Source: Mobula birostris (Eukaryota). From it: a DNA stretch of 64,000 nucleotides. Position numbers and translations under genes: made by a program. Of the stretch, positions 9,498 to 62,253 are shown piece after piece; the stretch's first letter is position 1; each line of letters begins with the position of its first letter. The stretch spans positions 12,612,316 to 12,676,315 of the forward strand of contig NC_092384.1 of NCBI RefSeq assembly GCF_030028105.1, given 5' to 3'. The notes under the pieces are model-generated. The model was given only the letters and a program-made list of their open reading frames with translations. It had not been told where the DNA came from and did not search any database.

Positions 9498-9549
9498 ATG
9501 TCAGCAAGTGTGTTTCTCTTTCTGGCAGTCAGTGGGATCATTTACATAG
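9498..9549 (+). CDS. VJ-C1 IgSF receptor copy 1, exon 1 (leader MSASVFLFLAVSGIIYI)
   Basis: ATG plus hydrophobic leader, phase-1 donor atag/gtacag, paralog at 39061-39109. Confidence 0.85.
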
Positions 9550-9686
9550 GTACAGCTTTATTCATTTCTGCGTGTTTTAATTTATCAATCAATGTCCGAT
9601 AAGATTACACGATATTGAAGCTAACTGTGAATCAGCTGTAGGTTACACTTTAATTCAACTTAGCTAAATTAACCGTTCCTTTTTAG

Positions 9687-10007
9687 CTGCGGATCAAACT
9701 TCGTTCAATGTATCTCAATCGCCCAAAGAAGCGGTGGTATCCAAAGGAGAGAACGTCACGTTCTACTGCGTATTTCCCATTTCTCAGGATGAATCCTGGG
9801 TAAAAGTCTATTGGTGGAAACAGGGCGAGAATGAATACCAACGGACAAGCACCGGCAGCAGAAAGCATTCCGGTCGGAGGGGTAAAAGAACTTGGTACTT
9901 TGAGTTGCAAAATGTAATGGGTCAAGATTCTGGATTGTATCTGTGTTCATTGACCCGCAAAGGATTGCCTGCAAGAAATGGAACCGGATCACTTCTGAAA
10001 GTTCATG
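9687..10007 (+). CDS. Receptor copy 1, exon 2 (germline-joined VJ-type Ig domain)
   Basis: Acceptor ttttag/ and donor g/gtaagc, 321 nt open. VTFYC..VYWWKQ..QDSGLYLC..NGTGSLLKV gives B-Cys, C-Trp, DxGxYxC and a J-like GxG. Confidence 0.92.
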
Positions 10008-10097
10008 GTAAGCTAAAATAACTGGAGAACAACTTATCCATGAAGTATAAAAATATACCACGCCAAGAAACAGGTTCACCATGAAAAGATCCTTTAA

Positions 10098-10326
10098 CGT
10101 CCTTTGAACAAGACAAATTAGGGAAATCTGCAGATGCTGGAAATCCAAGCAACACACACAAGATGCTAGAGGAGCTCAGCAGGCAAGGTAGAGTAGAGCC
10201 GACGGCTCGATCCGAGACTCCTCACCCAGCACTGATGGAGGGTCTCGGCCCGAAATGTGAACTGTACTCTATTCCAGAGGTGGTTCCTGGCCTGCTGAGC
10301 CTCTCCAGCATTTTGCGTGTGTTGCC
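10098..10326. repeat. Palindromic Penelope-derived insertion in intron 2 of copy 1
   Basis: 10149-10325 is self-complementary (gcaacacac..ctcagcaggc versus gcctgctgag..gtgtgttgc), flanked by TTAA on both sides, and absent at the copy-2 site. Confidence 0.7.
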
Positions 10327-11203
10327 TTAATATCGTTTGCCCTGGTTATGTTGTAAGATTAAAGTCAATGCTCTATCCCCTGTCTGCGAATAAGAGGGTC
10401 TTCGAGGGTTTCTCATGAATCTCTTAATTCACTAAATTTACCACCATCACTATCTCCAACACTAGTAATCGGAGACGTTGTTTCTTTATATATCTGTAAT
10501 ATAGATATATTCATAAAATTCCAATGAAAGATGTTATTTGGAGAATTGTTGGATTACACTAGATTAAATTGTGAACGGCTGTCATACTAAAATGTAAGGC
10601 TTCTCTGCAAGTAATACGGACAGAAAAGAAGGGCGATCAGGTACGAAAAGTCATCGATTTCCTGCTGAAATCTTTCGGCAACTTGATTTCTTGAAGTTGC
10701 TGCGTGAAAACATCACAGATCTCCATGAAGCTAGGCCCACAACTTTCAATGTCCTACTTTATTACGTCTTGTCTAAATGCCTTCTAATTTCATAACTGGA
10801 TCGGATCCACCGATTCCTCCTTTCTTCCGGGTATATGTTAGCTTGCTTTTCATACTCCTACGCGGAATAAAATGTTGTAGTAATCCAGGGTTTCTTTGCT
10901 TCAACACTCAGGTCACGCTCATCCTCCGTTGCTCGTCGTTCGTAGGAAACCAGGCAATACCATTTTACCACTTGATCAAAATCCTCCCAAACCAAGAAAA
11001 AAATATCTTAAGTCTTCGCCACTCCCTCCGGCATAACACATCCCTCCTACATTGTGGACACCAGACTGCTACGAATAAGGCAAACGGTGGTTTAACTAGT
11101 TTGATACAAAATTCCAATATAATATCCCAACTTCTATATTCTATCTGCTAACTCATCAAAGTATCATTCTGCGCCACCCTCTGTTGCCACTTTACGGGGA
11201 CAT

Positions 11204-12262
11204 GAACATAGAACAAAGAATAGTACAGCACAGTACAGGCAGTTCGGCCTACATTGTTGTGCCGACCCTCAAACCCTGCCTCCCATATAACCCCCCACTC
11301 TAAATTCCTCCATATACCTGTCTAGTAGTCTCTTAAATTTTGCTAGTGTATCTGCCTCCACCACTGACTCAGGCAGTGTATTCCACGCACCAACCACTCC
11401 CTAAGTAAAAAACCTTCCTCTAAATATCCCCCTTGAACTTCCCACCCCTTACCTTAAAGCCATGTCCCCTTGTATTGAGCAGTGGTGCCCTGGGGAAGAG
11501 GCGCTGGCTATCAACAACTACCTATTCCTCTTATTATCTTGTATACCTCTATCATGTCTCCTCTCATCCTCCTTCTCTCCAAAGAGTAAAGCCCTGGCTC
11601 CCTTAAACTCTGATCATAATCCATACTCTCTAAACCAGGCAGCATCCTGGTAAATATCCTCAGGACCCTTTCCAGTGCTTCCACATCCTTCCTATAGTGA
11701 GGCGACCAGAACTGGACACAGTCCTCCAAGTGTGGCCTAACCAGAGTTTTATAGAGCTGCATCATTACCTCGCGACTCTTAAACTCTTATCCCTCGACCT
11801 ATGAAAGCTAACACCACATAAGCTTTTTTAACTACCCTATCTACCTGTGAGGCAACTTTCAGGGATCTGTGGACATGTGCCCCCAGATCCCTCTGCTCCT
11901 CCACACTATCAAGTATCCTGCCATTTACTTTGTACTCTGCCTTGGAGTTTGTCCTTCCAAAGTGTACCACCTCACCCTTCTCCAGGCTGAACTCCATCTG
12001 CCACTTCTCAGCCCACTTCTGCAACCTATCAATGTCTCTCTGCAATCCTCGACAATCCTCTACACTATCTACAACAGCACCAACCTTTGTGTTGCCTGCA
12101 AACTTGCCAACTCACCCTTCTACCCCCACATCCAGGTCGTTAATAAAAATCACGAAAAGTAGAGGTCACAGAACCGATCCCTGTGGGACACCAGTAGTCA
12201 CAACTCTCCAATCCGAATGTACTTTCTTCACCATGGACCTTCTGCCTTCTGCAGGCAAGCCA
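11204..12262 (-). mobile_element. CR1 3' fragment in intron 2 of copy 1
   Basis: LYKTLVRPHLEDCVQFWSP, LERRRMRGDMIEVYKI, and a ctatgttc-type tail; absent from the homologous sites of copies 2 and 3. Confidence 0.9.
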
Positions 12263-12570
12263 ATTCTGAATTTAAAGTTTTTCCTGTTCAACAACAGTTC
12301 CTAGCACCCATACATCTATTGAATGTTTCATGACCCTTTATCACTTTCCAATATGCATTATATGGCACTTGGCTATATTACATCCCAATTTCCAATGCCC
12401 CCTAACTTTGTAATCTCATCTCTGACTGCTTACGCTACTGTTTGACATTCCGAAAGAAGTATAGAATAAATATAAAGGATTTAAAATACAGCGTGTAACC
12501 CAGTGTTGGTCAATTACACGGCATTGTATACTGGAGCGTGGAAAATTCAAAACATCACCATGAACTCTCA

Positions 12571-13700
12571 GAAATATGGAAACATAGAAAACCTACAGCA
12601 CAATACAGACCCTTCTTCCCACAATAATGGGCCGAACATACACTTAATTTAGAAATTGCCTAGGGTTTTCCATAGCCCTCTATTTTTCTAAGCTCCGTGT
12701 ACCTATTAAAAGAATCCATTAAAGAGTCTATTAAAAGCCCTATCACTTCCACCTCCAACGACATTGGTTGCAGCCCAGTCCACGCACTCACCACTTTCTG
12801 CATAAAACTTACCCGTCACATCTCCTCTGTACCTTCTTCCAAGCACCTTAAAAGTATGCACTATTGTGTTAGCCATTTCAGCCCTGGTAAACCCACTGAC
12901 TATCCACACGATCAATGCCTCTCATCATCTTATACATCTCTATCAGGTCACCACTCATTTCCCGCCGACCCAGGAGAAAACACCGAGTTCACTATTCTCA
13001 GAAGGCATGCTCCCCAATCCAGAGAACATCCTTGTAAATCTCTTCTGCACACTTTCTATGGTTTCTACATTCTTCCTCCAGTGAGGTGACCAGAACTGAG
13101 CACAGTCCTCCAAGTGGGGTATGACCAGGGTCCTATATAGCTGCAACATTACCTCTTGGCTGCTAAACTCAATCTCACGGTTGATGAAGGCCAATGGACC
13201 GTATGCCTTCTTAACCACAGAGTCAACCTGCGCAGCAGCTTTGAGTATCATATGGACTCAGACCCAAGAACCCTCTGATCCTCCACACTGCCAAAAGTCT
13301 TGCCATTAATAGTATATTCTGCCATCATATTTGACGTACATCACACTTATCTGGGTTGAACTCCATCTGCCATTTCTCAGCCCAGTTTTGCATCCTATCA
13401 ATTTCTTGCTGTAACCTCTGACAGCCCGCCGCACTATTCACAACTTCCCCAAACTTTGTGTCATTAGCAAATTTACTGATCCAAACCTCCACTTCCTCAT
13501 CCAAGTCATTTATAAAAAAATTACGAAGAGAAGGCGTTCCAGAACTGATCCCTGAGGCACACCACCGGTCACCGACCTCCATGCAGAATATGACCCGTCT
13601 GCGACCACTCTTTGTCTTCTGTGAGCAAGCCAATTCTGGATCCACAAAGCAAGTTGCCCTTGCTGAAATCTATATACACTGCATATACTGCTCTACCTTC
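12571..13700 (-). mobile_element. CR1 3' fragment in intron 2 of copy 1
   Basis: FINDLDEEVEVWISKFANDTK and LYRTLVIPHLEDCAQFWSP; absent in copies 2 and 3. Confidence 0.88.
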
Positions 13701-13869
13701 AATAAATAAAGGGCGATCAGGCATGTAAATGGTATGGCGTTGACTGCTGGCGAATTTGAAAACGATACATGATTTTCAACCACGTCTGTACAGAATATTT
13801 TTATTGTAAAGCAGATTCCATACTCATTTTCACATAATTGAACTGTAGTTTGCTTGCCACAATCTGTGT

Positions 13870-14045
13870 GCTACCCTTTAAGTTCTTGATTAGCCAGGGC
13901 ATCAAAGGTTATGGGGAGAAAGCAGAAGAATAGGTATGACTGGAAGAATTGGATCAGTCCATGATTGAATGGCGGAGCAGACTCGATGGGCCGGATGGGC
14001 CGAATGGCCTACTTCTGCTCCTGTATCTTATGGGCTTATGGTCTT
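13870..14045 (+). mobile_element. Short CR1 3'-end fragment
   Basis: gatgggccgaatggcctacttctgctcctgtatcttatgg is a CR1 terminal motif. Confidence 0.65.
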
Positions 14046-14296
14046 TCTCAAGGTTATTTTGTTAAATCTTTAGACGCCGTAAAATACAATATGAATATCA
14101 GAAGTGGTGTTATTGAGACACAGCAGATGATGTCGTCTAATATGAATCAGGGTCATGAATTATTAGCGGATATAGATCGTATTAAAAACATTTCTTCACA
14201 TGCATACATCATAGTTAATGAATCTAAGGATAATTTAAGGGAAATACTTCAATATCGCAAAGTCATTTAACATTTTTTCCATTATCTGTTCCACAG

Positions 14297-14599
14297 CAGT
14301 ACCAACTCAATTGAAGATTTTCGCGAAAAAGCATTCAACTACCGCCTTGATTATTGTGTGTGAAACAGCTGCATTTTATCCCAAGGACTTCTCGCTTACC
14401 TGGTATAAAAATGGTGTTGAAATAGTTTTGGGCACGCAGACTAATATAAAGAAGAACACCGAAGGTCTTTATGAGGTTTGGAGCAACTTGACAGAGATGC
14501 AGCCAGACAAGATCGGCAGAAATTATACCTGCATTGTATCTCATGTCTCGCTCAATACTTCAGCGGTGACAGTCTATTCTATTTCCAAATCTAACCAAG
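14297..14599 (+). CDS. Receptor copy 1, exon 3 (C1-set Ig domain)
   Basis: Acceptor ccacag/cag and donor g/gtacga, 303 nt open. IVCETAAFYPKDFSLTWYKNG..EGLY..YTCIVSHVSL carries the C1 hallmarks FYP and CxVxH. Confidence 0.92.
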
Positions 14600-15039
14600 G
14601 TACGAGGGCATGTCCTGCTACTTTATATATATACAAAATGCTATCACTGTTTGTCAGTGGTCGTGAGGAAAAGTCACCTTAATTCATTTAAGTGCAGAGT
14701 TTTGTTGACGGGCTTTTATTTAATATCGACTTCCATGTATTGCAAAATAGACAGCAATACATCCACTGTCCTGTGACTGGTGTTTATATCTAAACTCTTT
14801 TGTATGTTTTAGAAATTGGTAAACAAGTTTATTTATTTTAATAATTTGCATTACCACCCACGTATATTGATGCTTCTTCTGTGTACCAGTTGAAAAAAAA
14901 CATTTAATCTTTACAAGTTGCTCCGTTCCTTTCAGTTGCACAGTTTGCAGGAGCTTTCGTTTTACCTGGAGCTTCTATCAGTTTTCTACCCTGACCATGT
15001 TAAATCTCTCAATTCCAATCCTCCATCGACACCTCAGAA

Positions 15040-15040
15040 G

Positions 15041-15072
<32 letters not shown>
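15040..15072. repeat. (CG)n(CA)n microsatellite in intron 3 of copy 1
   Basis: Read directly; homologous tract at 42081-42140. Confidence 0.95.
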
Positions 15073-15073
<1 letters not shown>

Positions 15074-15523
15074 TCCACACTCAGCTCAGCTCCCACCGGA
15101 CGTAAACCATTGCTCCATTGCTATTCACTTACGAACATTTCCGGTACATATTTCTAAAGTACTACTCTTCCAAAATAAAGATTGTGACCTTCGACGTTTG
15201 CATTTCAATGAACGGTGGCTACAGGCTACAAGTTAAGAAATTATCAATCTCCGAATGAGAAAATGTCTTCCAGCTTCACCCTGTCCACCGGCAATCATCT
15301 TATAAAATGCAGTCTAGTAGCCTTGAGTTATCAGGCACTTCAGGGCAATTCAAAATCGTTCATCTGACCAATATAAGAATAACTTCACTGTTTATCTTGC
15401 TCAACAAGTAACATTACTCTTCCTTTAACGCTGTCCTGCTTATTTTCACTCCAATTGCCACAACCAGCAAAAACACCAACAGCTACCATTCCCTCCTTCT
15501 ATAAAAAGAGAATTATGTACTTA

Positions 15524-16970
15524 GAAGAAAGACATACAAGACTCACCACTCTCTGCATAAAACAAGGTACCCCTGTCATCTCCTCTGTACCTTCTTCCAA
15601 GCACCTTAAAACTATGCCCTTTCGTGCTAGCCATTTCAGCCCTCGGAAAAAGCCTCTGACTATCCACACGATCAATGCCTCTCATCATCTTATACACCTC
15701 TATCAGGTCACCTCTCATCCTCCGTCGCTCCAAGGAGAAAAGGCTGAGTTCATTCAACCTATTCTCATAAGGCATGCTCCCCAATCCAGACAATATCCTT
15801 GTAAATCTCATCTGCACCTTTTCTGTGGTTTCCACGTCCTTCCTGTAGTGAGGCGACCGGAACTGAGCAAAGTACTCAAAGTGGGGTCTGACCAGGGTCC
15901 TATATAGCTGCAACATTACCTCCCGGCTCTTAAACTCAATCCCACGGTTGATGAGGACCAATGCACCGTATGCCTTCTGAACCACAGAGTCAACCTGTGT
16001 AGCAGCTTTGAGTGTCCTGTGGACTCAGACCCTAAGATCTCTCTGATCCTCCACACTGCCAAGAGTCTTACCATGAATGCTATATTCTGCCATTATATTT
16101 GACCTCCCAAAATGAACAACCTCACACTAATCTGGATTGAACTCCATCTGCCACTTCTCAGCCCAGTTTTCATCCTATCGATGTCCCCCGTATCCTCTGA
16201 TAGCCCTCCACACTATCCACAACACCCCCAACCTTTGTGTCAGCAGCAAATTTACTATCCTATCCCTCCACTTCCTCATCCACGTCATTTATAAACATCA
16301 CGAAGAGTAGGGGTCCCAGAACAGATCCCTGCAGTATATCACTGCTCACCGACTTCCATTCAGAATAATCCTCCTCACTTTCTAAATAAGCCTTGCATGG
16401 GGTACTTTATCAAATGCCTTGCTGAAACCCATATACACTGCGTCTATGGTTCAATGCGTTTAGTCACATCCTCAATAAATTCAATCAACCTCATAAGACC
16501 TGCCTTTGACAAAGCCATGCTGACTATTCCTAATCATTTTATGCCTCTCCAAATGTTCATAAATCCTGTCTTTCAGGATCTTAATCAACTTACCTAACAC
16601 TGAAGTATGACTCACTGGTCTATAATTTCCTGGGAGATCTCTACTCCCTTTCTTGAATAAGGGAACAACAACCACAACCCTCAAATCCTCCGGTACCTCT
16701 CCCATCCTCATTGATGATGCAAAGATCATCACCAGACGCTCAGAAATCTCCTCCCTCGCTTCCCACAGTAGCCGGTGACTTATCCAACTTTATGTTTTCC
16801 AAAAGCTCCAGCACACACTCTTCCTTAATATCTACATGGGCAAGCTTTTCAGTCCGCTGCAGCCATCCCTACAGTCACTGAGATCCTTTTCCGTAGTGAA
16901 TATTGAAGCAAAGTATTCGTTAAGTACCTCTGCTATCTCCTCCGGTTCATACATACTTTTCCACTGTCAC
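15524..16970 (-). mobile_element. CR1 fragment in intron 3 of copy 1, flanked by ACTTA repeats
   Basis: RT C-terminal ORFs (15521-15985, 16481-16732); actta at 15519-15523 and 16971-16975; absent in copy 2. Confidence 0.88.
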
Positions 16971-17014
16971 ACTTAACCACAGCTTCCATAATGTATACTC
17001 TGACAAACTTCCAG

Positions 17015-17128
17015 GTTCCTCTGACAAATCTCTTTCCATTTGGGTTTCTGGTGGTACATTGGCTGGATTTGTGATTTTACTGCTAATGTTCATCATTCGG
17101 ACGCGGTGCCGAAAGCAGGAAAGGAAGG
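17015..17128 (+). CDS. Receptor copy 1, exon 4 (stalk and uncharged transmembrane segment)
   Basis: cttccag/ to g/gtaaga, 114 nt: GSSDKSLSIWVSGGTLAGFVILLLMFIIRTRCRKQERK; paralog at 42639-42752. Confidence 0.88.
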
Positions 17129-17267
17129 GTAAGATTTAAATATCGTTTTCCAAATCCACAAGCAGGATACTACTACAAGAAAACTACTTGAGCAACTTCC
17201 TCCAGGACAGCATGATCGTCGCAGGAGCTTCAATAGTCTGTTTTGCCTGTATTGTTTGGGTCACATA

Positions 17268-17830
17268 TAGTGCCTATAAAAAGTATTTACCTCCACGCCT
17301 GGAGTTTTAATGTTTTATTGTCTTACAACATTGGATCACAGTGGATTTAATTTGTCTTTTTTTTGACATTGAAACAACAACAAAAAAAGACTCTTTCATG
17401 CCAAAATAAAAACAATACTCTGCAAAGTGATCTAAATTAATTACAAGTAAAACACACAAAACAATTGCTTGCATAAATAATGTGGGGATGGTGTGCTTTT
17501 GATGATGTGCAGTGTTTCGCTTACTCCAAACATAGCGTTTAGTCTGATGGCTAGAAAGCGCAATTTTGGTTTTATCAAACCATAGCGTTTTCTTCCAGCT
17601 GCCGTCAGAGTCTCCCACGTTCGTTCACCCACTTCAAGTCAATATTTACTGGATGCACCTTTGTCAGCAATTACAGCCTTGAGTCTGTGTGGATAGCTGT
17701 CTATCAGCATTGCACATCTGGACACTGCAATTTTCCCCATTCTTCAAACTCTGTCAGATTGCATGGGGATCATGAATGACAGCCCTTTTCAAGTCCACTC
17801 ACAAATTTTCAATTGGATTCGGCCTGTTGT
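17268..17830 (-). mobile_element. Tc1/mariner remnant with one terminal inverted repeat
   Basis: TA followed by tagtgcctataaaaagtatttac (Tc1-type end); WKKTLWFDKTKIALSSHQTKRYVWSKRNTAHHQKHTIPT resembles the Tc1 W-S-D-E-T-K region. Confidence 0.78.
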
Positions 17831-17889
17831 GTGTTCTGCTTGATCTGACAGGATGCCAATTGATCCGATGTTCCAACTGATTTCCTTGT

Positions 17890-18470
17890 AACAAGGTACG
17901 CTCACCATTCTCCTGCTAATAACACACACTTCAGGAAATTTAGAATTACAACTTCAGCTAACCTGCATGAGTTTGAATGAGGAAGAACGCCATGAGTAGA
18001 GTGGGTGCGATCCTTCAGGATGGTAATCGCCTTTTTTCGGCACCTTATTGTACGTATCTGTGCCGGTGAAGTGTTGCCTGTTTTTGACTTCCCATTGTAG
18101 AGACGTCCTATCCAGCACCAGTGCAGGTTCTGTACCCTGCAGTGATGCAACATGTTTGCATTTCCTTTACTGTGTATCTGCAGAAGGACGTAAGTATAGA
18201 TGTGCATACGCCAGCTCCCTCAGACTCCTCGGAGTGTAGAGCAGTTGGTGAGCTTTCCTGCTTCTGTAGGATGTTCTGGAACCATGAGAGCTTGGGTAAG
18301 ATGTGCACACCCATGAGCTTGAAACTTTCCCCTTTGTAAAGAGTGGTGTGAGCGTTGCAAGTTTATCTGAAGCCCTCGGCCATTTCCTTTATATTGTTGA
18401 CATCACTGAAGCAGTTATTTGCCTGGCTCCAGGCCCCAAGCTCTTCCACTTCTTAACTATCTGAGGTCTT
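17890..18470 (-). mobile_element. L2-clade LINE 3' remnant
   Basis: SILTSFCRYTVKEMQTCCITAGYRTC resembles the L2 FYRCTVESILT.CIT.WYG.C motif seen at 36357-36689 and 58105-58470. Confidence 0.65.
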
Positions 18471-18479
18471 TTAAATCAG

Positions 18480-19970
18480 GAAGTCCAACAACAATTATTC
18501 ATCCAGGTCATTTATAAAAATCACGAAGAGTAGGGGTCCCAGAACAGATCCCTGAGGCATACCATTGGTCACCGACCTCCATGCAAAACATGACCCATCT
18601 ACAACCACTCTTTGCGTTCCGTGGGTAAGCCAGTTCTGGATCCACGAAGTAATTTACCCTTGGATCCCATGCCTCTTTACTTTCTCAGTAAGCCTTGCAT
18701 CGGGTACCTTGTAAATTGCCTTGCTGAAATCCATATACGCATTACATCTACTGCTGTACCATCGTCAATGTGTTCAGTTGCATCCTCAAAAAATTCAGTG
18801 AGGCTCATAACGCATGAGCTGCCTTTGACAAAGCCATGCTGACTATTCCTAATCTTATTATGCCTCTCCAGATGTTCATAAATCCTGCCTCTCAGGATCT
18901 TCTCCATCAACTTACCAACCACTGAAGTAAGTCTCACTGGTCGGTTATTTTCTGGGCTATCTCTACTCCCTTTCTTGAATAATGGAATAACATCCGCAAC
19001 CCTCTAGTCCTCCGTAACATCTCCCGTCCCCACTGATGATGCAAAACCATCGGCAGAGGCTCAGTAATCTCCATCCTCGCTTCCCACAGTAGCCTGGAGT
19101 ACATCTTGTTCAGTCATGGTGACACCCAACTTGATGCTTTCCAAAAGCTCCAGCACACCCACTTAATTAATGTGTACATGCTCAAGCTTTTAAGTCCACT
19201 ACAAATCATCCCTACAGTCGCCAAGATGCTTTTCCGTAGTGAACACTGAAGGAAAGTACTCATTAAGTACCTCTGCTATCTCCTCCGTTTCCATACATAT
19301 TTTTCCACTGTCACACTTAATTGGTCCTATTCTCTCACGTCTTATCCACTTGCTCTTAACATACTTGTAGAATTCCTTTTGGGTTTTCCTTAATCCTGTC
19401 CACCAAGGCCTTCTCATGGCCCCTTCTGGCTCTCCTAATTTCGTTCTTGAGCTCCTTCCTGCCAGCCTGATAATCTTCTTGCTCTCTATCATCTCCTAGC
19501 TTTTTGAACCTTTCGTAAGCTCTTCTCTTCTTGACTAGATTTATTACAGCCTTTGTACACCACGGCCCCTGTACCTTACCATATCTTTCCCTGTCTCATT
19601 GAAAAGTGCTTATGCAGAACTCCATGCAAATATCCCCTGAACATTTGCCACATTTCTTCCGTACATTTTCCTGAGAACATCTGTTCCCAATTTATACTTC
19701 CAAGTTCCTGCCTGATAGCCTCATATTTCCCCTGACTACAATTAAACGCTTTTCTAACTAGTCTGTTCCTATCCCTCTCCAATGCTATTTTAAAGGAGAT
19801 AGAGTTGTGATCCCGGTCTCCAAAGTGCTCTCCTACTGAGAGATCTGACACCTGACCAGGTTTATTTCCCAATATGAGATCAAGTACAGCCTCTCTTCTT
19901 GTAGGCTTATCTATGTATGACAACCTTTGTGGTTCTGCTGCTCAACTTCCGTCCTAACTACCTGTAGTCT
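18480..19970 (-). mobile_element. CR1 ORF2 fragment
   Basis: LTSVVGKLMEKILRGRIYEHLE..QHGFVKG and PTRREAVLDLILGN. Confidence 0.88.
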
Positions 19971-19974
19971 ACCT

Positions 19975-20614
19975 TAGATTAGATTAGATTATGAGGACAC
20001 GCAGTGCTCTTTTATTGTCATTTAGTAATGCATGCATTAAGAAATGATACAATGTTTCCCCGGAATGATATCAAAGAAACAAATGACAAAACGACTGAAA
20101 AACTGACAAAATCACATAATTATAACATATAGTTACAACAGTGCAAAGCAATACCTTAATTTGATAAAGAACAGACCATGGCATGGTAAAAAGTCTCAAA
20201 GTCTCTCGAAAGTTCCATCATCTGACGCAGACAGTGAACCTCCAGCGCCGCGAACTTGCCGATGCAGCGTCCTGGAAGCATCCGACCACAGTCCGACTCC
20301 GAGTCCGTCCGAAAACTCCGAGCCTCCGACCAGATCTCCGACACCGAGCACCGAGCACCAACTCTGCCAAGCGCTTCGACCCCGGCCCCGGCAACAGGCA
20401 ATAGGCAAAGCAAGGATTTGGGGCCTTCCCCTCCGGAGATTCTCGATCGCACAGTAGCAGCAGCAACGAAGTGGGCATTTCAGAAGTTTCTCCAGGTGTT
20501 CCCCTGTGCTTCTCACGGCTGTCTCCATCAAATCAGGTCTGAAGCACGGCATCCTAGTTAACACATACGATATCATTCTGAACGGCCGTGAGCGCTGCGC
20601 CGCGCCGCCATCTT
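19975..20614 (-). mobile_element. Non-autonomous retroposon-like repeat (GC-rich aagatggcg 5' end, short tandem tail)
   Basis: (agatt)n tail at the left, reverse complement of aagatggcggcgcgg at the right; similar 5' motifs at 23291 and 34202. Confidence 0.45.
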
Positions 20615-20629
20615 CTCCCTCCAGAGACC

Positions 20630-22960
20630 TCCTCCATTTTTCTGCTTATGTCTTTGGTACCAATATGTACCACGACCTCTGGCCGTCCTCCTTCTTACTT
20701 CAGGATATCTTTACGTGATCGGAAACATGCCGGACCCTGGCACCTAGGAGCTAAACTATCACCCGTGCTTCTTTCCTGCGTCCACGGAATCGCCTGTCTG
20801 ACCCCGTAACTATAGAGTCCCCTATCACTGCTGCCATCCTTTTCCTTTTCCTACCCTTCTGAGCCACAGGGCCAGACTCTGTGCCATAAACGCAGCCAAT
20901 GTTGCTTCCCCCAGGTAGGCCATCACCTCCCCCCCCCCCACTAAAAGTACTCAAGCAGGAGTACTTATTAAGAAGGAGTACAGCCACAGGGGTGCTCTAA
21001 ATAAACATAGAAAACCTATAGCACAATAGAGGCCATTCGGCCCACAACGCTCTGCCACAACTATCGTCAGAGGCTTTTTCCCAGGGATGAAATAGCTAGC
21101 ACGAGAGGGCATAGTTTTAAAGTGCTTGGAAGCAGGTATAGAGGAGTTGTCGGTGTAAGTTTTTTATGCAGATAGTGTTGAGTGCATGAAATGGGCTGCG
21201 GGCGGCGGCGGTGGAGGCGGAAACGAGAGGGTCTGTTCAGAGACTACTGGATGGATACATGGAGCTAAGATAAATAGAGGGCTATCGGTAAGCCTAGGTA
21301 ATTCTAAGGTATGAGCATGTTCACCCCAGCTTTGTGGACCGAAGGGCCTGTATGGTGCTGTAGGTTTTCTATGTTTCTGTGTTTCAATCCACACAATCAA
21401 TGGCTCTCATTATTTTGTACACCACTATCAGGTCACCGCTCATTCTCCGTCACTCCAAGGAAAAAAGGCCGAGTTCACTCAACCTATTCTCATAAGGCAT
21501 GCTTCCCAATCCAGGCAACATCCTTATAAATCTCCTATGTACCCTTTCTATGGTTTTCACGTCCTTCCTGTAGTGAGGCGACGAGAACTGAGCACAGTAC
21601 TCTAAGTGGGGTCTAACCCAGGTCCAATATAGGTACAACATTACCTCTCGGCTCTTAAACTGAATCCCACGGTTGATGAAGGCCAAAGCACCATATGCCT
21701 TCTAAACCACAGAGTCAACCTGTGTAGCAGACTTGAGTGTCCTATCGACTCAGACCCCAAGATCCCTCTGATTGTCCACACTGCCAAGAGTCTTACCATT
21801 AAGACTATATGCTATATTCTTCATGCTATATGCTATTTTTGACCTACCGAAATGAACCACCTCACACTTATTGGGGTTGAATTCCATCTGCCACTTCTCA
21901 GCCCAGTTTTGCATCATATCAGTGTCCCGCTGTAAACTCTGACAGCCCTCCACACTATCCACAATACCCCCAACTTTTGTGTCATCAGCAAATTTACTAA
22001 CCAATCCTTCCACTTCCTCATACACGTCATTTATAAAAATCACAAAGAGTAGGGGTCTCAGCGCGATTCACTGCAGCAAAAACAACTGAATAAAGTATAT
22101 TCCCTCAACTAATTTTCTGCAATTCAGAGCATTTTGTAAACTTTTACTGCGGCCAATCTTACATGCCTTCTTCGAGCTGTGCTCCTGTAATAAATTCGAT
22201 CAATTGATCTCCTTTCGCACTTGAAATTTGTCGGTTTTGGTTTTGATTTTGGTTTTGATCCCTGAGGCACAGCGCTGGTCACCGACCTCCATACAGAATA
22301 TGACCCTCCTACAGTCACACTTTTCCTTCTGTGGGCAAGCCAGTTCTCGATCCACAAAGTAATGTCCTCTTGGATCCCATGCCTTAAAACTTACTCAATA
22401 AGCTTTGCAAGGGTTACATTATCAGATGCCTTGCTGAAATCCATATACACTACATCTACTGCTCTACCTTCATCAATGCTCTCTAGCCTCTGAATCCTGC
22501 CCTTCCCTCTCCTGACTGTTACCCAATTATTTGTCTCTCCAAGCCCTGGTGTGCCTATAGCTCCTCTCTATCACCTCCTCACTCTCCCTGACCAGACAAA
22601 GATAATTGAGCTCCATCTCCAGTTCCCTAAGACGATCCCTAAGTAGCTGCAGCTCGACTCACCAGGCGCAGATGTGGCCGTCTGGGAGGCTGAGAGTTTC
22701 CCGGACATCCACATCCTTGACAACTCGTCTGACTCCTTCGTCACCTCGGCCGGCTTCGCCGCCGATACCAGTCCAGCTACTCCGATCAACGAGAAGCTCA
22801 CTGAAGGAGTAGCCTTGCAGTACCCGAAGTTCTTGGGCAGAATTGGCTTTGGATCGTAAAAGACAAATTTTACAAAGACGAAAGAACCTTTGGTTGGCCC
22901 CCGAGTGCCCACTGCATTCGCACGCGCCAATCTTACAATTGGACAAAGATCATAAACTGA
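20630..22960 (-). mobile_element. Composite of CR1 pieces (ORF1 VIGDSIV motif, RT 3' ends, ORF1 N-terminus)
   Basis: MAAVIGDSIVTGSDRRF, FINDVYEEVEGLVSKFADDTK, VRETLSLPDGHIC; one short plus-strand 3' end at about 21060-21370. Confidence 0.8.
22057..22245 (+). repeat. 189-bp direct repeat, copy A (copy B at 23056-23244)
   Basis: Read directly; 3 mismatches seen between the copies. Confidence 0.95.
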
Positions 22961-25840: not shown

Positions 25841-25845
25841 GCCCC

Positions 25846-28256: not shown

Positions 28257-28259
<3 letters not shown>

Positions 28260-51800: not shown

Positions 51801-52070
51801 TGGTACCCTCTATTTCTAAGACTATGGACTCTTGTCCTGGACTCACCCACTAAGGGAAACAACCTTTCCACATCTTCTCTGTCCAACCCTTTCAACATTG
51901 GAGATGTTTCTATGAGATCCCCTCTCATTCTTCTATACTCTAACGAGTACAATCCAAGAGCCGACAAAAGCTCCTCATATGTTAGCCCCTCCAAGAGCCG
52001 ACAAATGCTCCTCATATGTTAGCCCCTCCAAGAGCCGACAAGCGCTCCTCATATGTTAGCCCCAGAATCC
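48900..52070 (-). mobile_element. Two CR1 fragments of other subfamilies
   Basis: QHGFFHGKSCLTNLLEFFEE..PQGSVCGPLLF and VLYLNARSIRNKLDDL; a second 3' end at about 51535-52063. Confidence 0.85.
51954..52063. repeat. 37-bp unit repeated three times at a CR1 truncation point
   Basis: ccaagagccgacaaaagctcctcatatgttagcccct starts at 51954, 51991 and 52028. Confidence 0.92.
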
Positions 52071-52539
52071 CTTCACTCCGGTTCCCAACTCCCTGCCAGG
52101 TTAGTTTAAACCCTCCCCAGCAGTTCTAACAAACGTGCCTGCAAGAATGTTGATCTCCTCCTATGATCTAGTCTCCTCTCTATCAGATTCCTTTCACTTA
52201 AGCCATTCTTTATCTTCCCTACCACTCCGGTTTCAGCAATCACCTTTTAACCATCCTCCTTCCTCTTCCTCTACCTTTTTATTCTGGCGTCTTACCCCTT
52301 CCTTTCCAGTATTGAAGACAGGTCTCGTCCGAAGCGCCTACTGCCATCGATGATGATTCCTGATTTGCTAGTTCCTGCAATATTTTGTATGTGTCGCTTT
52401 GGATTTCCAGCATCTTCAGACTTTCTCGTGGCTATGCTTCGTTGAAAAAATTTCAGGACTTTGGTGAGGCCTTATGTGGACCATTGTGTGCATTTTTTGG
52501 TCACCTACCTACAGTAAACATGTATTTAAGATCGAAAGA

Positions 52540-53900: not shown

Positions 53901-54309
53901 CCAGATCTAAGCCCGAAAGTGGATCTTAACTCCAGAAGTCAATGTTCAATGGAGAGAGATGGAGTCTGCAAATCTCTGTGTATCCCCTGCGGAAGTCACA
54001 GGGGAATATGTCGAGCACAGGAGACTGCTGGACGCCGAGGCCGAAGATGCCCTGATCAGGGATTAGAAGACTGTGTGTGCCCGTGGGTGTATGTGTGAGA
54101 GGGAGAAAGGAATGATACTTCTTTAAAAGTCGTTGATTTGTCGCTTGTTATGTTCTGCTTTGATGTGTTTTGTATTTTAATGCGGAGAAAGGTGGGCAAA
54201 GTGGCGCTGGAATGTGAGGCGACTGCGAGTTGCACCAAGCATATTCTTGGGTGTGTTGGTTATTAACGACGGCGGCACATTTCACAGCATGTTCCGATGT
54301 ACAGTCAAT

Positions 54310-57300: not shown

Positions 57301-57797
57301 AAACTATGTATTGTTTAAATCTAGAAGAAATTAAAAGTGTCATTTATGACCCATCTATTAAATTTGATGAGACTTGGAGAGTATTTCCACATGATGTAAT
57401 TTGACCCTTTCCAAATCTATTTTGTGAATTCAGTATACGGGGAGAGGAGCGGAAGTGGCGACACTATTGGTTCTATCTATGGTATCATAATAGCCCTTTC
57501 TTTTTCTTTTTATTAGTTGTCTTTTAATTTGGGTAGATTAGTTTTTTTTCTAATGGGGTATATATATTTTTCTTCTTCTGTTTTTTTTACGATGCTTTTG
57601 TATTTTATGTATATCTTTTATATATTTTATTGCTAATTTGTGTGATTTTGGGAGGTTTACTAACTATGTGTTACTTGACTGTACTGTATACTCTTATAAT
57701 ATAATAATTATTAATTAATACAATCCCAATCGCTCTGCATTTATTTTTTTGTAATGTATATGATGTTCAAACTAATAAAAACATTGAAAAAGAAAGA
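54310..57797 (+). mobile_element. L1/Tx1-clade LINE ORF2, AT-rich, many stops and frameshifts, with 3'UTR and A-rich tail
   Basis: [63 protein letters not shown]; aataaaaacattgaaaaagaaagaa at the end. Confidence 0.9.
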
Positions 57798-57799
57798 AT

Positions 57800-58480
57800 G
57801 GTCCAATAGGTGTTACACAACACCTCAAAAGTTTTTTTTTCTCCTCTCTGCCGCAATAATAAGAACACAATTATAAAAAAACATAATAAATATAAATGCA
57901 TGATACCTCATATACACCGGCTGATCGTATGTCCATAAAGTAACGATAGGCAGACGAGTGTCTGTACATGAGGTGACTCTTGCAGGAAACGATAAAATAG
58001 TGGTGGAGGGGACTGTGAAAGGGACTTGAGTGAAAAGAGGTGCTGATCAGCCTTACCGCTGGGGAACCTAATTGATTTTGATTCTGGTGAGATTGGTGTG
58101 GATGCTACGCAGCCTGCTTCCCGACGGGAATGGGACAAACAGTGCACGAGTAGGGTGGTTGCGATCCTTCATGATGTTGGTCCTTTTCCAACACCTTTCG
58201 GAAATTGATGGCGGGTAGGCGTGTACTGATGATGCATTGGGTAGTTTTGACTACCCGTTGTAGAGCCTCCCTGTCTCCTGCAGAGCAGGTTCTATACCGT
58301 GTAGTGGTGCAGAATGTTAGTATGTTCTCTACTGCGCATCTATAGAAGGACACCAGTGTAGATGTGCAGAGCTCAGCTATCTTCAACTTCCTCAGCATTC
58401 TTAGGTGGGCGGGTGAATAGTGCACGTAGGTAGCAATAACATAGGTAGGAAGAGTGATGAAGTTATGCAAAATGAATTCA
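57800..58480 (-). mobile_element. L2 3' fragment
   Basis: FYRCAVENILTFCTTTRYRTC. Confidence 0.7.
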
Positions 58481-59560
58481 GGGAGATAAGTGTTAAGTTA
58501 AAGCCATCCATGGTCTAGATGTCAGGATTGCTAACCGTGCCACTTGCTAGTGAGATTCGACGTAGGAAGTTTATACAGTTTAACACGTACTTAAGGAGTT
58601 GATGTAGAAGGGAGGGCATAAGAATTTTGGGTTATTAGGCTTAATTCTAGGGAAGCTGGGACCTGTACAGAAGAGACGGTTTTCACCTGAACTTGCGGGT
58701 GGGTGGAGGTGCGGATAATATCCTAGCGAGAAGGGGTTGAGGGAGGCGAGGATGTGGGTTAAACTAGAGTTGCAGTGGGATGGGAACCAGAGTGCCAGAA
58801 CATATAGTGGAGAGCTTGTGAAGATAGTTGTTAAGACCTCAGAAAAAGTCCGGAATCAAAGATTTAAGCATGGTACGGCTGATGTCCTAAGCTACTATAT
58901 TTCAATGAAAGAAGTATCGTAGGAAAGGCATTTAAGCGCAGTGAACACATCGAATTATGATATTGCAGCCATTAGTGCGACTTGTTTGCAGGAGTGGCAG
59001 GGCTGGCAGCACAGTATTCTGGGATTCCATTTGACGTGTCAGAGTGAGAGGAATTAAAGGAGGAGGGGTGGCGTTACTAGTTAGGGAAAATATCACGGCA
59101 GTGTTCAGTCTGGACAGAGTGGAAAACTCTTCTAGTGAGGCGTTATGGGTGGAACTGAGAAATAAGAAGTGTGTGGCCACGTTAATAGGGCTATATTACA
59201 GACTGCTCAACATTCCGGGTGATATAAAAGGAAAAAAAATGTACAGAGATTGCAGAATGTTGCAAAAAATAAGGTTGTTGAAGCATGTGATTTTAGCATT
59301 CCTCATACTGACTGGAACTTCCATACTGTAAAAAAGAAATAGATTGGATAGAGATTGTCGAATGTATTCAGGAAAGTTTCCTTAATCAGTACACAGTGGC
59401 CCCAATGACAGAGTGTGTGATACCTGTTCTGGTATTACGGAATGAGACTGGGTAGGCGACAGACGTTTGTGTAGGGGAACATTTTGCATCTATTAATCAC
59501 AATGCATTAGTTTCAAAGTAAATATTCAACAAGATAGGTATGGCCTGATCTCTCCTGTGC
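58480..59560 (+). mobile_element. Degenerate CR1 ORF1 end and endonuclease
   Basis: GGGVALLVRENITA..SEALWVELRNKK. Confidence 0.75.
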
Positions 59561-59584
59561 AGGTCTAACCTTCTCAGGAAGATT

Positions 59585-60690
59585 TAGAATCAGAATCAGA
59601 ATCAGATTTATTATCACCGGCATGTGACGTGAAATGTGTTAATTTAGCAGCCGCAGTTCAATACAATGCATAATCTAGCAGAGAAAGAAAAAATAATAAA
59701 TAAAATAAAACAATAATAAATAAACAAGTATATCAATTACGTATACTGTATTTTTTTAAATGTGCAAAAACAGAAATATTGTATATTTAAAAAATGGGGT
59801 AGTGTCAAAAGCTTCAATGTCCTTTTAGGAATCGGATGGCAGAGGGGAAGATGCTGTTCCTGAGTCACTGAGTGTGTGCCTTCAGGCATCTGTATCTCCT
59901 AACTGATGGTAATAGTGAGAAAAGGGCATGCTCTGGGTGCTGGAGGTCCTTAATAATGGACGCTGCCTTCCTGAGACACCGCTCCCTAAAGATGTCCTGG
60001 GTACTTTGTAGGCTAGTGCCCAAGATGGAGCTGACTAGATTTACTGCAGCTTCTTTTGGTCCCGTGCAGTAGCCCCTCCATACCAAACAGTGAAGTAGCC
60101 TATCAGAATGCTCGCCACTGTACAACTATAGAAGTTTTTTTTAGTGTATTTATTACCATGTCAAATCTTTTCAAACCCCTAATAAAGTATAGCCGCTGTC
60201 TTGCCTTCTTTAGACTACATCGATATGTGGGGACCAGGTTAGATCCTCAGAGATCTTGACACCGAGGAACTTGAAGCTGCTCACTCTTTCCATTTCTGAT
60301 TCCTCTATGAGGATTGGTATGTGCTCCTTCGGCTTACCCTTCCTGAAGTCCACAATCAGCTCTTTCATCTGACGTTGAGTGCCAGGTTGTTGCTGTGACA
60401 CCATTCCACTAGTTGGCATATCTCACTCCTGTACATACTCTCGTCACCACCTGAGATTCTAACAACAATGGTTGCATCGCCTGCAAATTTGTAGATGGTA
60501 TTTGAGCTACACCTAGCCACACAGTCATGTGTATACAGAGAGTAGATCAGAGGGCTAAGCACACACCCCTGAGGTGCGCCAGTGTTGATCGTCAGCGAGG
60601 AGGATATGTTATCACCAATCCGCACATACTATGGTCTTCCAGTTAGGAAGTCAGGGATGCAATTGCAGCGGGAAATACAGATCCAATGAT
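59585..60690 (-). mobile_element. L2-clade LINE RT 3' fragment
   Basis: TGAPQGCVLSPLIYSLYTHDC..KFAGD and FKFLGVKISEDLTW; (attctg)n tail. Confidence 0.88.
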
Positions 60691-60834
60691 CTAAAAATCC
60701 TATGCCCTCCCTCTTACACCAACTCCTTAGCCACTGTATAGCTTCCTATTTGTGGCATCAGTAGCACGGGGCACGGGTAGCAATCGTGAGATCGCAGCCC
60801 TGGAGGTCCTGCCCTTTACCCTACACCCCAGCGG

Positions 60835-62253
60835 GGAAGCATGAAGACTCTGCGATTTCCTGTAGGGATCTCTCTGCACTTTGATTTCTTGAAGTTAGTG
60901 CTTAAAACATCGAGGATCTGCACCATCTTACGACCACTACAATCAACATCCTACATTATTAAGCCCTGTCCAAATGCCTCCTAATCGTATAACTGCTTCA
61001 GATTACACCAGCCCCATCCGTTTTGAGTTCCTCTCAAATCTCGCCCAAATGCTTTTGAAAATTCCTCCCCTTTTTCCAAACATACGACGGCTTGCTTCTG
61101 ATTTTCCTACCACGTTGCAACTATTAAGTCTTTCCAGGCTTCGACACATAGGTCAATCTTAACCTCATTGGTTCGGAGGAAGAAGCTCAGGCGATACCAT
61201 CCTTGTTCATAACCAAAATCCACCCAATCCAAGAAAACGGCTTGCTGAGTCTTCCCCGCCCCTGCTGGCATAATACATCCTTCCTATATCATAAACAGCA
61301 GACTGACTCGATTAACGCAAATACTGTTTAACCAATCTGAAGCAAAAATTCCCGTATAACATTGCAACTTCTATATTTTATCTGCTAACCCATGAAAGTA
61401 AGCACTTTGCAACATTTTTTGTTGCCGTTTTACAGGAACATGAATCCCAAACAGCATCCCGTAGCATCCCAGCATTTATTATGATTCCCGCACCTTGACG
61501 ACTTCCCAGATACTTACATGCCACTTGCTCTTTAAAACCCCAATTTACAATTATCCTACCTCTGTAATCTAATCACTGACTGCTTAATTTACTGTTTAAC
61601 ATTCCCAAAGAAATATAGAATAAATGTAAAGAATTTAAGAGGCAGTGTGTAATACAATGCCTGTCAGCTACTCGACATTGTGTACTGGAGCATGGAAAAT
61701 TCAAAGTTGAACCACACACTCATCCAATAAATGACATACTGTAATTTGCAATTGCCATGGTGCTGCAATCCGGCGAAATTGAAAACGATATATTCCTTTC
61801 AGGCACTTCTGTCCAGGATATTTTATTATAAAGCAGCTTACTTTCTCATTTTCAGATAATTAAACTGTAGTTTACTCGTCACTATCCGAGTGAAACAAAT
61901 CTAGAGTTTCTTCGTGTTACCCTCTCTCGAGGTGATTTGGTTAAATCTCTGGACTCCAAAAAAATACAATATGAATATTTCAAGTCGCGTTATTATCGCT
62001 GAGTTCGTGAAACACAGCAAATGCCGTCGTCTAATTTGAATCTGGATCGTGAATTACAAGCTGATATAGTTAATAATAATAATAATAATAATAACAACAA
62101 CAACATTTCTTCAAATTTTACCATCTTAATTAATGGACCCGAGGTTAATTTAATGAAAATCATTTAACATTTTTCCCATTTTCTGTTCCGTAGCTGCTCC
62201 AACTCCATTGGATATTTTCGCAACAAATACTACAGCTGCAACTTTCATTCTCG
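60835..62253 (+). pseudogene. Receptor copy 3: intron-2 homolog plus the first 20 codons of a C1 exon (62194-62253), interrupted by an LTR element
   Basis: Colinear with introns 2 of copies 1 and 2; ttccgtag/ AAPTPLDIFATNTTAATFILV stops just before the B-strand Cys; no leader or V exon found upstream. Confidence 0.82.
62071..62105. repeat. (TAA)n(CAA)n microsatellite specific to copy 3
   Basis: Read directly; copy 1 has only attaaaaacatttc at this site. Confidence 0.9.

What the first reader, a model, noticed from the sequence alone, without database searches (positions are those of the whole stretch)
9498..62253. Tandem cluster of non-rearranging VJ-C1 immune receptor genes hidden in TE debris
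Seen: two four-exon genes with open frames, GT-AG phase-1 junctions and identical V/C1/TM exon lengths (321/303/114 nt), plus a third broken copy. Each has a leader, a V domain whose J-like G strand (NGTGSLLKV) lies in the same exon, a true C1-set domain and a TM segment. Known: C1-set domains are restricted to Ig/TCR, MHC, beta-2-microglobulin, tapasin, SIRP and B7-H6-type molecules. Germline VJ and VJ-C1 genes such as NKp30 and SIRP are discussed as relatives of the pre-RAG antigen-receptor ancestor. Inference: an expanding birth-and-death innate receptor family in a cartilaginous fish. I cannot assign it to a named gene, and it may be undescribed.
Basis: partly seen in the sequence, partly recalled or inferred. 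Interest (0 to 1): 0.88.

Follow-up and report, generated by a model that had tools for sequence, protein, structure and literature searches.

The report
Paired antibody-like receptor genes in a manta ray
This stretch of a manta-type ray genome holds two intact genes and one fragment of a shark-and-ray-only family of cell-surface receptors built like a ready-joined antibody light chain, one wired to switch cells on and one of the kind that switches them off; relatives' genome annotations already predict the family, but I found no name or study of it.

Summary
On the + strand there are two intact genes with leader, single-exon VJ-type V domain (321 nt), C1-set domain (303 nt) and transmembrane exon (114 nt). 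All junctions are GT-AG and phase 1. A third copy is only a fragment.

The genes are not four-exon genes. Copy B has two more short cytoplasmic exons. Copy A's Mobula hypostoma orthologue has three more, carrying an ITIM and an ITSM; a 6.7-kb deletion has removed them here.

B has an Arg in its membrane span and a short tail (activating type). A has the uncharged span of the inhibitory type. The pairing "Arg with short tail, Gly with ITIM tail" recurs across relatives, so this is part of a paired activating/inhibitory receptor cluster. The scan's own notes place further members on both sides of the window.

Homologues were found only in sharks, rays and chimaeras. RefSeq predicts them under conflicting automatic names (tapasin-related, SIRP-beta, B7-H6-like, Ig-lambda-like). 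By sequence and fold the family is equally distant (17-26% identity) from SIRP, B7-H6, Ig/TCR, TAPBPL and butyrophilins.

It is a real, already-predicted family that I could not find named.

The parts
9498..9549 (+). Gene A exon 1: ATG and signal peptide (MSASVFLFLAVSGIIYI), ends in phase 1
   Evidence: Read directly; spliced translation; 100% collinear with M. hypostoma P0164 exon 1
9687..10007 (+). Gene A exon 2: V-set domain with the J-like G strand (NGTGSLLKV) in the same exon, 321 nt, phase 1/1
   Evidence: V-set E 9e-8; AF2 model pLDDT 87; nearest folds are shark VNAR, PD-1 and TCR V
14297..14599 (+). Gene A exon 3: C1-set domain (CETAAFYPKDFSLTWYKNG ... YTCIVSHVSL), 303 nt, phase 1/1
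   Evidence: (C1-set E 5e-10, 40 bits against a cut-off of 21)
17015..17139 (+). Gene A exon 4: stalk, uncharged TM (WVSGGTLAGFVILLLMFII) and RTRCRKQERK. The canonical exon ends at 17128 (114 nt, GT donor); unspliced read-through stops at TAA 17137-17139
   Evidence: TM is 92% identical to the ITIM-bearing M. hypostoma orthologue
17990..17992 (.). Deletion junction. The 6.7 kb present in M. hypostoma (L001 18906-25620), holding A's cytoplasmic exons 5-7 with ITIM LSYATL and ITSM TEYAEL, is absent here
39061..39109 (+). Gene B exon 1: signal peptide (MSSMLLLLAVSGNIYI)
39269..39589 (+). Gene B exon 2: VJ-type V domain, 321 nt
41380..41682 (+). Gene B exon 3: C1-set domain, 303 nt
   Evidence: (E 4e-12)
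42639..42752 (+). Gene B exon 4: stalk and TM with Arg near its outer end (WVPRFVMGGLAILVLMIAIG), 114 nt
43899..43936 (+). Gene B exon 5: 38-nt cytoplasmic mini-exon ((G)KEECLTEANQRE)
   Evidence: matches the tails of Hypanus P0007/P0166 and Mobula P0128
44282..44568 (+). Old (about 75% identical) direct duplicate of 43617-43903, that is, the end of intron 4 with the exon-5 acceptor; it supplies the acceptor of exon 6
44564..44587 (+). Gene B exon 6: terminal exon VKSAIRA plus stop
   Evidence: the same tail (REVKSAIRV) is in Hypanus sabinus isoform P0007
44594..44668 (-). Inverted relic of the canonical cytoplasmic exon 6 (KTEAVIIHYAAMDFSRHKNTPGRKG), in the wrong orientation for gene B
60853..62255 (+). 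Third copy, fragment only: intron-1 remnants (60853-62193) and the first 62 nt of a C1 exon (62194-62255, AAPTPLDIFATNTTAATFILV)
62256..64000 (.). Sequence that cuts off the third copy, probably a retroelement (weak, sub-threshold integrase traces); 97% identical to M. hypostoma L002 633-2385

Best explanation
The window holds part of a tandem cluster of germline-joined (non-rearranging) VJ-C1 transmembrane receptors. They belong to a large multigene family found so far only in cartilaginous fishes, and the family is organised as paired receptors. Gene B is the activating type. It has an Arg near the outer end of its membrane span and a 30-residue tail without tyrosine motifs. That tail ends in a short terminal exon whose acceptor is a duplicated copy of the exon-5 acceptor, sitting next to an inverted relic of the old tail exon. 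By inference, B signals through an ITAM adaptor of the FcR-gamma/CD3-zeta kind, docked on the Arg. Gene A is the inhibitory type. It has an uncharged span, and its M. hypostoma orthologue carries ITIM LSYATL and ITSM TEYAEL, which by inference recruit SHP phosphatases. In this genome a 6.7-kb deletion has removed A's tail exons, so A can at best make a tail-less receptor ending ...RKGKI, or it is on the way to being a pseudogene. The third copy is a dead fragment. The ectodomain is a compact V domain without a C'' strand (VNAR/PD-1-like) on a true C1 domain, and its ligand is unknown. Shown here: gene structures, domains, purifying selection, orthology, the deletion, the rearrangement, and the link between Arg and tail type. 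Inferred: adaptor use, phosphatase recruitment, expression and immune function.
For: Gene models and phases. Domains. Selection: A versus B dN/dS is 0.48 (V), 0.32 (C1) and 1.0 (TM), with exons free of indels while introns are 68-77% identical; A versus its M. hypostoma orthologue gives pN/pS 0.35. Orthologue P0164 is 95% identical and has a 108-aa ITIM/ITSM tail. The window lacks L001 18906-25620, which holds those exons. B's exons 5 and 6 match the tails of the Hypanus B orthologue, and the inverted exon relic and duplicated acceptor are seen. Among eight close relatives, Arg at the WxxR position goes with short tails and Gly there goes with ITIM+ITSM tails. A crude scan of 74 family members gave the same trend (Fisher p 0.01; sequences not independent). 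Family spread. Further members flank the window: L002 is collinear with the window's end, and scan notes say the same.
Against: No expression data were available, and no adaptor, phosphatase or ligand was tested. A's deletion could be an assembly error or a polymorphism. B's Arg lies at the very start of the span, so it might sit at the membrane boundary instead of inside it. The TM exon shows dN/dS of about 1 between A and B. The Arg/tail correlation across the wider family is noisy, with 13 of 36 'charged' members also scoring an ITIM; most of those have the basic residue just outside the span.
Confidence: 0.72

Rival explanations
1. These are the cartilaginous-fish members of the NKp30 (NCR3) / B7-H6 system already described by Flajnik, Ohta and colleagues (the 'shark NCR3 family', eight divergent subtypes). 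The V-C1 forms would be long isoforms or the B7-H6-like partners.
For: B7-H6 (NCR3LG1) is the top Swiss-Prot fold hit for the V-C1 model, and several relatives are auto-named NCR3LG1-like. V-only members and splice forms exist: Heterodontus P0073 and P0076 are the same gene with and without the C1 exon. A TM Arg plus a VJ domain is the NKp30 design. Nurse shark NCR3 genes are reported as a divergent multigene family (cited in PMC12227049).
Against: The B7-H6 hit leads by a trivial margin (E 1.1e-13 against 1.3e-13 for PD-L1; 19% identity). NCR3 is not among the 30 best Swiss-Prot fold hits or the 60 best PDB sequence hits for the V domain. No hit carried an NCR3 name. According to scan notes, which I did not check, MHC genes and an NKp30-like cluster lie on other pieces of this genome.
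Confidence: 0.13
2. They are the chondrichthyan orthologues of the SIRP family (SIRP-alpha inhibitory, SIRP-beta activating).
For: Many relatives are auto-named SIRP-beta-1-like or PTPNS1-like. SIRPs have a VJ-type V, C1 domains and a paired ITIM / charged-TM design. SIRP-beta and SIRP-alpha are among the top fold hits at 21-23% identity. Some family members have two C1 domains (P0013, P0015, P0173).
Against: The similarity is no higher than to B7-H6, PD-L1, TCR-beta, Ig lambda, TAPBPL or butyrophilins. There is one C1 domain, not two. The TM residue is Arg at the outer end, whereas SIRP-beta (from general knowledge) has a mid-span Lys that docks DAP12. Beyond cartilaginous fishes, E-values drop from 1e-50 to 1e-11.
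Confidence: 0.08
3. They are cartilaginous-fish members of the PRARP family (non-rearranging VJ-C1-TM-ITIM genes described in chicken and other non-mammalian bony vertebrates).
For: As I recall it from the literature, the architecture is the same: a single-exon VJ, a C1 domain, a TM and ITIM tails. PRARP is cited as an MHC-region VJ gene in PMC10751288. A scan note calls another gene of this genome PRARP-like.
Against: No bird, reptile or teleost V-C1 protein appeared among about 30 named hits, and the profile search fell to E 1e-11 outside cartilaginous fishes. No PRARP sequence or paper was available, so this is absence of evidence only.
Confidence: 0.07

Closest known systems
SIRP-alpha / SIRP-beta paired receptors
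   Same: A germline VJ-type V domain followed by a C1-set domain, a single TM, and inhibitory (ITIM) and activating (charged TM, short tail) partners encoded side by side.
   Different: One C1 domain instead of two; Arg at the outer end of the TM, not a mid-span Lys; only 21-23% identity, no closer than other V-C1 families; no orthology shown.
B7-H6 (NCR3LG1) and NKp30 (NCR3)
   Same: B7-H6 is V-C1-TM with tyrosine motifs in the tail and is the nominal top fold hit. NKp30 is a VJ domain on a TM with Arg, and V-only splice forms of this family look like it.
   Different: 19-20% identity with no margin over PD-L1 or SIRP. NCR3 is not among the best V-domain hits. Here one family supplies both the V-only and the V-C1 forms.
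UrIg / UrIg2 (non-rearranging shark antibody-like genes; PMC12227049)
   Same: A single-exon VJ followed by C1 domains, non-rearranging, found in cartilaginous fishes. UrIg2 (PDB 9dmx) is the best single-sequence PDB hit for the C1 exon.
   Different: UrIg and UrIg2 have 3 to 11 C domains, form Ig-like dimers, and are secreted or have no ITIM/Arg pairing. The UrIg2 score is summed over three domains, and the best single domain scores only 27 bits.
PRARP (Fu et al. 2019)
   Same: From recall: VJ-C1-TM with ITIM tails, non-rearranging.
   Different: Described in bony vertebrates.
Ig light chain / TCR chains
   Same: VJ + C1 two-domain ectodomain, split leader, phase-1 exons. Light chains are the best PDB fold hits for the two-domain model and TCR/VNAR V for the V domain.
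   Different: V and J lie in one exon with no gap and so no RSS; no extracellular interchain Cys; own TM with signalling motifs; the V domain lacks the C'' strand (58 residues between the cysteines).

Membership tests
Non-rearranging VJ-C1 receptors (general kind: SIRP, PRARP, UrIg, B7-H6-like) | V domain with the J-like G-strand motif (GxG[T/S]xLxV) encoded in the same exon as the rest of V | tested here: met
   GTGSLLKV lies inside exons 9687-10007 and 39269-39589
Non-rearranging VJ-C1 receptors (general kind: SIRP, PRARP, UrIg, B7-H6-like) | A C1-set domain follows the V domain | tested here: met
   Pfam C1-set at 40 and 46.8 bits against a cut-off of 21; motifs FYPxxxxxxW and YTCxVxH are present
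Paired activating/inhibitory Ig-like receptors | Closely related ectodomains on two kinds of genes: a charged TM with a short tail, and an uncharged TM with an ITIM/ITSM tail, in one cluster | tested here: met
   B has a TM Arg and a 30-aa tail. A has an uncharged TM, and its orthologue has ITIM+ITSM. The pattern repeats in 8 close relatives and as a trend in 74 family members
Paired activating/inhibitory Ig-like receptors | The activating form binds an ITAM adaptor and the inhibitory form binds SHP phosphatases | not testable with these tools
   Needs biochemistry
SIRP | V-C1-C1 ectodomain and specific sequence/synteny relationship to SIRPA/B/G | tested here: not met
   Only one C1 domain; 21-23% identity, no better than six other families; synteny not tested
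NKp30 (NCR3) | Single VJ domain with no C domain; V domain groups with NCR3; MHC linkage | tested here: inconclusive
   A C1 exon is present in both genes. NCR3 is absent from the top V-domain hits. V-only splice forms exist in the family. Shark NCR3 sequences and linkage could not be tested
B7-H6 (NCR3LG1) / B7 family | V-C ectodomain grouping with B7 members | tested here: inconclusive
   Top fold hit, but with E 1.1e-13 against 1.3e-13 for the next family and 19% identity. V-domain hits are mostly Ig/TCR V, with CD79b, PD-1 and CD8-beta among them; PD-L1 is the only B7 member, at rank 13
UrIg / UrIg2 | VJ followed by three or more C1 domains, Ig-like homodimer | tested here: not met
   One C1 domain followed by a TM; no extracellular stalk Cys
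PRARP | Sequence grouping with chicken/reptile/teleost PRARPa/b | not testable with these tools
   No PRARP sequence or paper available; no bony-vertebrate close hits
Tapasin / TAPBPL | Large N-terminal domain before the Ig domains | tested here: not met
   The signal peptide is followed directly by the V domain; fold hits cover only the Ig part of TAPBPL (residues 198-407)

The most novel reading that the evidence does not exclude
This is an unnamed lineage of germline VJ-C1 receptors found throughout cartilaginous fishes, with dozens of genes per genome, not orthologous to SIRP, PRARP, NCR3/B7-H6 or UrIg. It would be one more surviving branch of the pre-RAG antigen-receptor stock, and one that has independently evolved a paired activating/inhibitory system with module swapping between V, C1 and signalling exons.
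Probability: 0.3. Interest if true: 0.72.

Novelty: new member of a known kind. Interest (0 to 1): 0.5.

Why it matters
Single-exon VJ domains joined to C1 domains are what people look for when they ask which gene the RAG transposon split to create antibodies and T-cell receptors. A large family of this kind confined to sharks, rays and chimaeras, equally distant from all named V-C1 families, adds a comparison point for that question. It also shows that the paired-receptor logic known from KIR, SIRP and NITR is present in the oldest jawed vertebrates. Within the window, two natural events show how such pairs are made and lost. A duplication and an inversion gave gene B a short tail, and a deletion stripped the inhibitory tail from gene A. 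In practical terms, the conflicting automatic names in public annotation (tapasin-related, SIRP-beta, MHC class II beta, Ig lambda) are misleading and should be replaced with one family name.

Tried and rejected
1. I looked for A's cytoplasmic exons in 17129-38900 with tblastn of orthologue tails, short-word blastn and motif scans. None was found, and the M. hypostoma comparison showed why: a deletion.

2. I looked for ITIM exons of B on either strand. Only the inverted exon-6 relic turned up.

3. I looked for a V exon of the third copy and found none.

4. Profile searches of PDB sequences with the V and C1 alignments were uninformative. Whole-chain E-values add up over many Ig domains, so titin, ROBO and whole antibodies come top.

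5. Word-indexed homologue searches did not reach beyond cartilaginous fishes.

6. I tried to fetch Hypanus sabinus DNA to date B's rearrangement. Two isoforms were not on record and no DNA was available for the third look-up.

7. Literature: Kinlein 2021, Fu 2019, Flajnik 2012 and 2023 and Ohta & Flajnik 2015 are not held, and I did not look up Ohta 2019. Searching 'PRARP' returns only unrelated acronyms.

8. A synteny query of the scan's notes returned nothing.

9. Other long ORFs in the window (18.5-34 kb and 45-60 kb) are reverse-transcriptase/endonuclease debris or have no Pfam hit, so I found no other cellular gene.

Full report
**What is there**

The window has no N runs and is 37-48% G+C. 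The motif NGTGSLLKV occurs twice on the + strand, each time at the end of a long open frame. Reading the DNA and splicing it gives two genes.

- Gene A: leader 9498-9549, V 9687-10007 (321 nt), C1 14297-14599 (303 nt), TM 17015-17128 (114 nt).
- Gene B: 39061-39109, 39269-39589, 41380-41682, 42639-42752.

Pfam calls V-set and C1-set above the curated cut-offs in both genes. The C1 exons carry the hallmarks CETAAFYPxxFSLTWYKNG and YTCxVSHVSL.

**Is it more than chance, and are the genes alive?**

A and B differ at 13-25% of exon bases without a single indel. Their introns and flanks are 68-77% identical (one 52-nt block is 88%) and full of indels. dN/dS is 0.48 for V, 0.32 for C1 and about 1 for the TM exon. 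Gene A's product is 95% identical over 263 residues to a RefSeq protein of Mobula hypostoma, P0164. The window as a whole is about 97% identical to that species' DNA, so it comes from another Mobula, which scan notes call a manta. Between the two species A shows pN/pS 0.35, based on 11 synonymous and 13 non-synonymous changes.

**The models are longer than four exons**

P0164 has 360 residues. Its tail is encoded by three more exons (L001 about 19180-19217, 19721-19816 and 19958-20112) and carries LSYATL (an ITIM) and TEYAEL (an ITSM). In the window, L001 14568-18905 aligns to 13658-17990 and L001 25621-29687 aligns to 17992-22061. The 6.7 kb in between, including those three exons, is missing. 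No trace of the exons is found elsewhere downstream of A. So in this assembly gene A is an inhibitory-type receptor that has lost its signalling tail. Read-through of the TM exon donor would end the protein at ...RKGKI (TAA at 17137-17139).

Gene B continues with a 38-nt exon, 43899-43936 ((G)KEECLTEANQRE), and an 8-codon terminal exon, 44564-44587 (VKSAIRA, stop). The acceptor of that last exon belongs to an old (about 75% identical) duplicate (44282-44568) of the end of intron 4 (43617-43903). Immediately after it, on the opposite strand (44668-44594), lies an intact but inverted copy of the canonical next exon, KTEAVIIHYAAMDFSRHKNTPGRKG. No ITIM exon follows on either strand. The same VKSAIR tail is present in a Hypanus sabinus isoform, P0007, so this arrangement predates the split of mantas and stingrays.

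**The third copy**

Pieces of A's intron 1 align in order to 60853-62227. A C1 exon starts at 62194 behind a good acceptor and reads AAPTPLDIFATNTTAATFILV. At 62256 the similarity stops, and a sequence begins that is 97% identical to a stretch of M. hypostoma DNA, L002 633-2385. It has only weak integrase-like traces. No leader, V or TM exon of this copy is in the window. It is a dead fragment.

**Paired-receptor logic**

B has Arg in WVPRFVMGGLAILVLMIAIG and a tail without tyrosine motifs. A has Gly at that place. Across eight close relatives the rule is strict:

- Arg with short tails: window B, Hypanus P0001 and P0166, Hemitrygon P0152.
- Gly with ITIM+ITSM tails: Mobula P0164 and P0128, Hemitrygon P0172. 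Window A also has Gly, but its tail exons are deleted.

A crude scan of 74 family members gives the same trend. Of 36 with a basic residue at or in the span, 23 lack an ITIM, against 12 of 38 without one (Fisher p 0.01). These sequences are not independent, and most exceptions have the basic residue just outside the span.

The modules are also shuffled. A's V domain is 94-95% identical to the stingray Arg-type genes, but its C1 is 80% identical and its TM 53-58%. In Heterodontus, one gene yields isoforms with and without the C1 exon (P0076 and P0073). Phase-1 exons allow this, and it produces an NKp30-like V-only form.

**Family and nearest relatives**

An exhaustive HMMER search with A's V exon found 165 proteins (54 at E below 1e-10). 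About 70 representatives share the motifs WWK...GTGSxLxV...YxCxVSH. Every one of the roughly 30 V-C1 or V-only hits whose name I looked up comes from a shark, ray or chimaera: Hypanus, Hemitrygon, Mobula, Narcine, Amblyraja, Leucoraja, Pristis, Scyliorhinus, Mustelus, Heterodontus, Heptranchias, Chiloscyllium, Hemiscyllium, Stegostoma, Carcharodon, Cetorhinus and Callorhinchus.

Their automatic names conflict. They include tapasin-related protein-like, SIRP-beta-1-like, PTPNS1-like, NCR3LG1-like, CD276 homolog, Ig lambda-1-like, MHC class II beta-like and uncharacterized. In the profile search, scores fall from E 1e-50 to 1e-11 at the first non-chondrichthyan protein.

An AlphaFold model of the V-C1 ectodomain of the orthologue (pLDDT 84) matches B7-H6, PD-L1, TCR-beta, SIRP-beta, Ig lambda, SIRP-alpha, CD276, TAPBPL and butyrophilins. 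All of these score E 1e-13 to 1e-11 at 17-23% identity. In the PDB it matches Ig light chains. A model of the window's own V exon (pLDDT 87) is closest to shark VNAR, PD-1, TCR V and CD79b. The list is flat (Z 13.8-14.7), and NCR3 is not among the top hits. The V domain has 58 residues between its cysteines and no C'' strand. By sequence, the best PDB match of the C1 exon is UrIg2 (9dmx), but that score is summed over three domains. No known family stands out as the home of these genes.

**Literature**

UrIg and UrIg2 are non-rearranging VJ genes of sharks with 3 to 11 C domains, so their architecture differs (PMC12227049). PMC10751288 names NKp30, PRARP and UrIg as the known non-split VJ genes of the MHC region. 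The papers on the shark NCR3 family (Kinlein 2021), PRARP (Fu 2019), B7H6/NKp30 (Flajnik 2012) and UrIg (Flajnik 2023), and the review by Ohta & Flajnik 2015, were not available. I did not look up the primordial immune complex paper (Ohta 2019). I therefore cannot say that the family is undescribed, only that I found no name for it.

**Context**

The scan's own notes place another member (TM Arg type) 3.4 kb before the window and an ITIM-type member 7.2 kb after it. The latter fits L002, the M. hypostoma P0128 gene, which is collinear with the window's end. The rest of the window is reverse-transcriptase/endonuclease debris and ORFs with no Pfam hit. Linkage to the MHC or its paralogons was not tested.

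**Verdict**

They belong to a paired activating/inhibitory VJ-C1 receptor cluster of a family specific to cartilaginous fishes. Genome annotation already predicts the family, but it is not coherently named. Three things are new relative to the finding: the complete gene models, the loss of A's inhibitory tail, and the duplication-plus-inversion behind B's short tail. Signalling partners, ligand and expression remain inferred.

Noticed in passing
window 17990-17992 versus L001 18906-25620: A clean 6.7-kb presence/absence difference between this genome and Mobula hypostoma removes three coding exons of an otherwise conserved gene. It could be a species difference, a polymorphism or an assembly collapse.
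   Followed up: partly
window 45777-47926 (-) versus L001 5619-7795: A 2.2-kb retroelement piece (RT/endonuclease ORFs) lies upstream of gene A in M. hypostoma but is absent from that site here. A 93%-identical copy lies downstream of gene B, which suggests recent TE activity in the cluster.
   Followed up: no
window about 15049-15073 and about 42100-42146: The same CA/TG-type microsatellite (read as HTHTHT in translation) sits in intron 3 of both genes, so it predates the A/B duplication.
   Followed up: no
P0073 / P0076 (Heterodontus francisci): Two RefSeq isoforms of one gene differ only by the C1 exon, so a V-C1 gene also yields a V-only, NKp30-like receptor. V-only 'NKp30-like' cDNAs in sharks could therefore come from V-C1 genes.
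   Followed up: partly
window 9687-10007 and family alignment A3: The J-like motif is nearly always preceded by Asn (NGTGS), which creates an N-glycosylation sequon at the start of the G strand. A's V domain is 94-95% identical between mantas and stingrays while its C1 (80%) and TM (53-58%) are not, which suggests a strongly conserved ligand face.
   Followed up: partly
window 62256-64000: The element that cuts off the third copy has long open frames with only weak integrase-like Pfam traces (rve_3 E 0.02), and a 97%-identical copy sits at the matching place in M. hypostoma. The sequence just upstream differs completely between the two species.
   Followed up: partly
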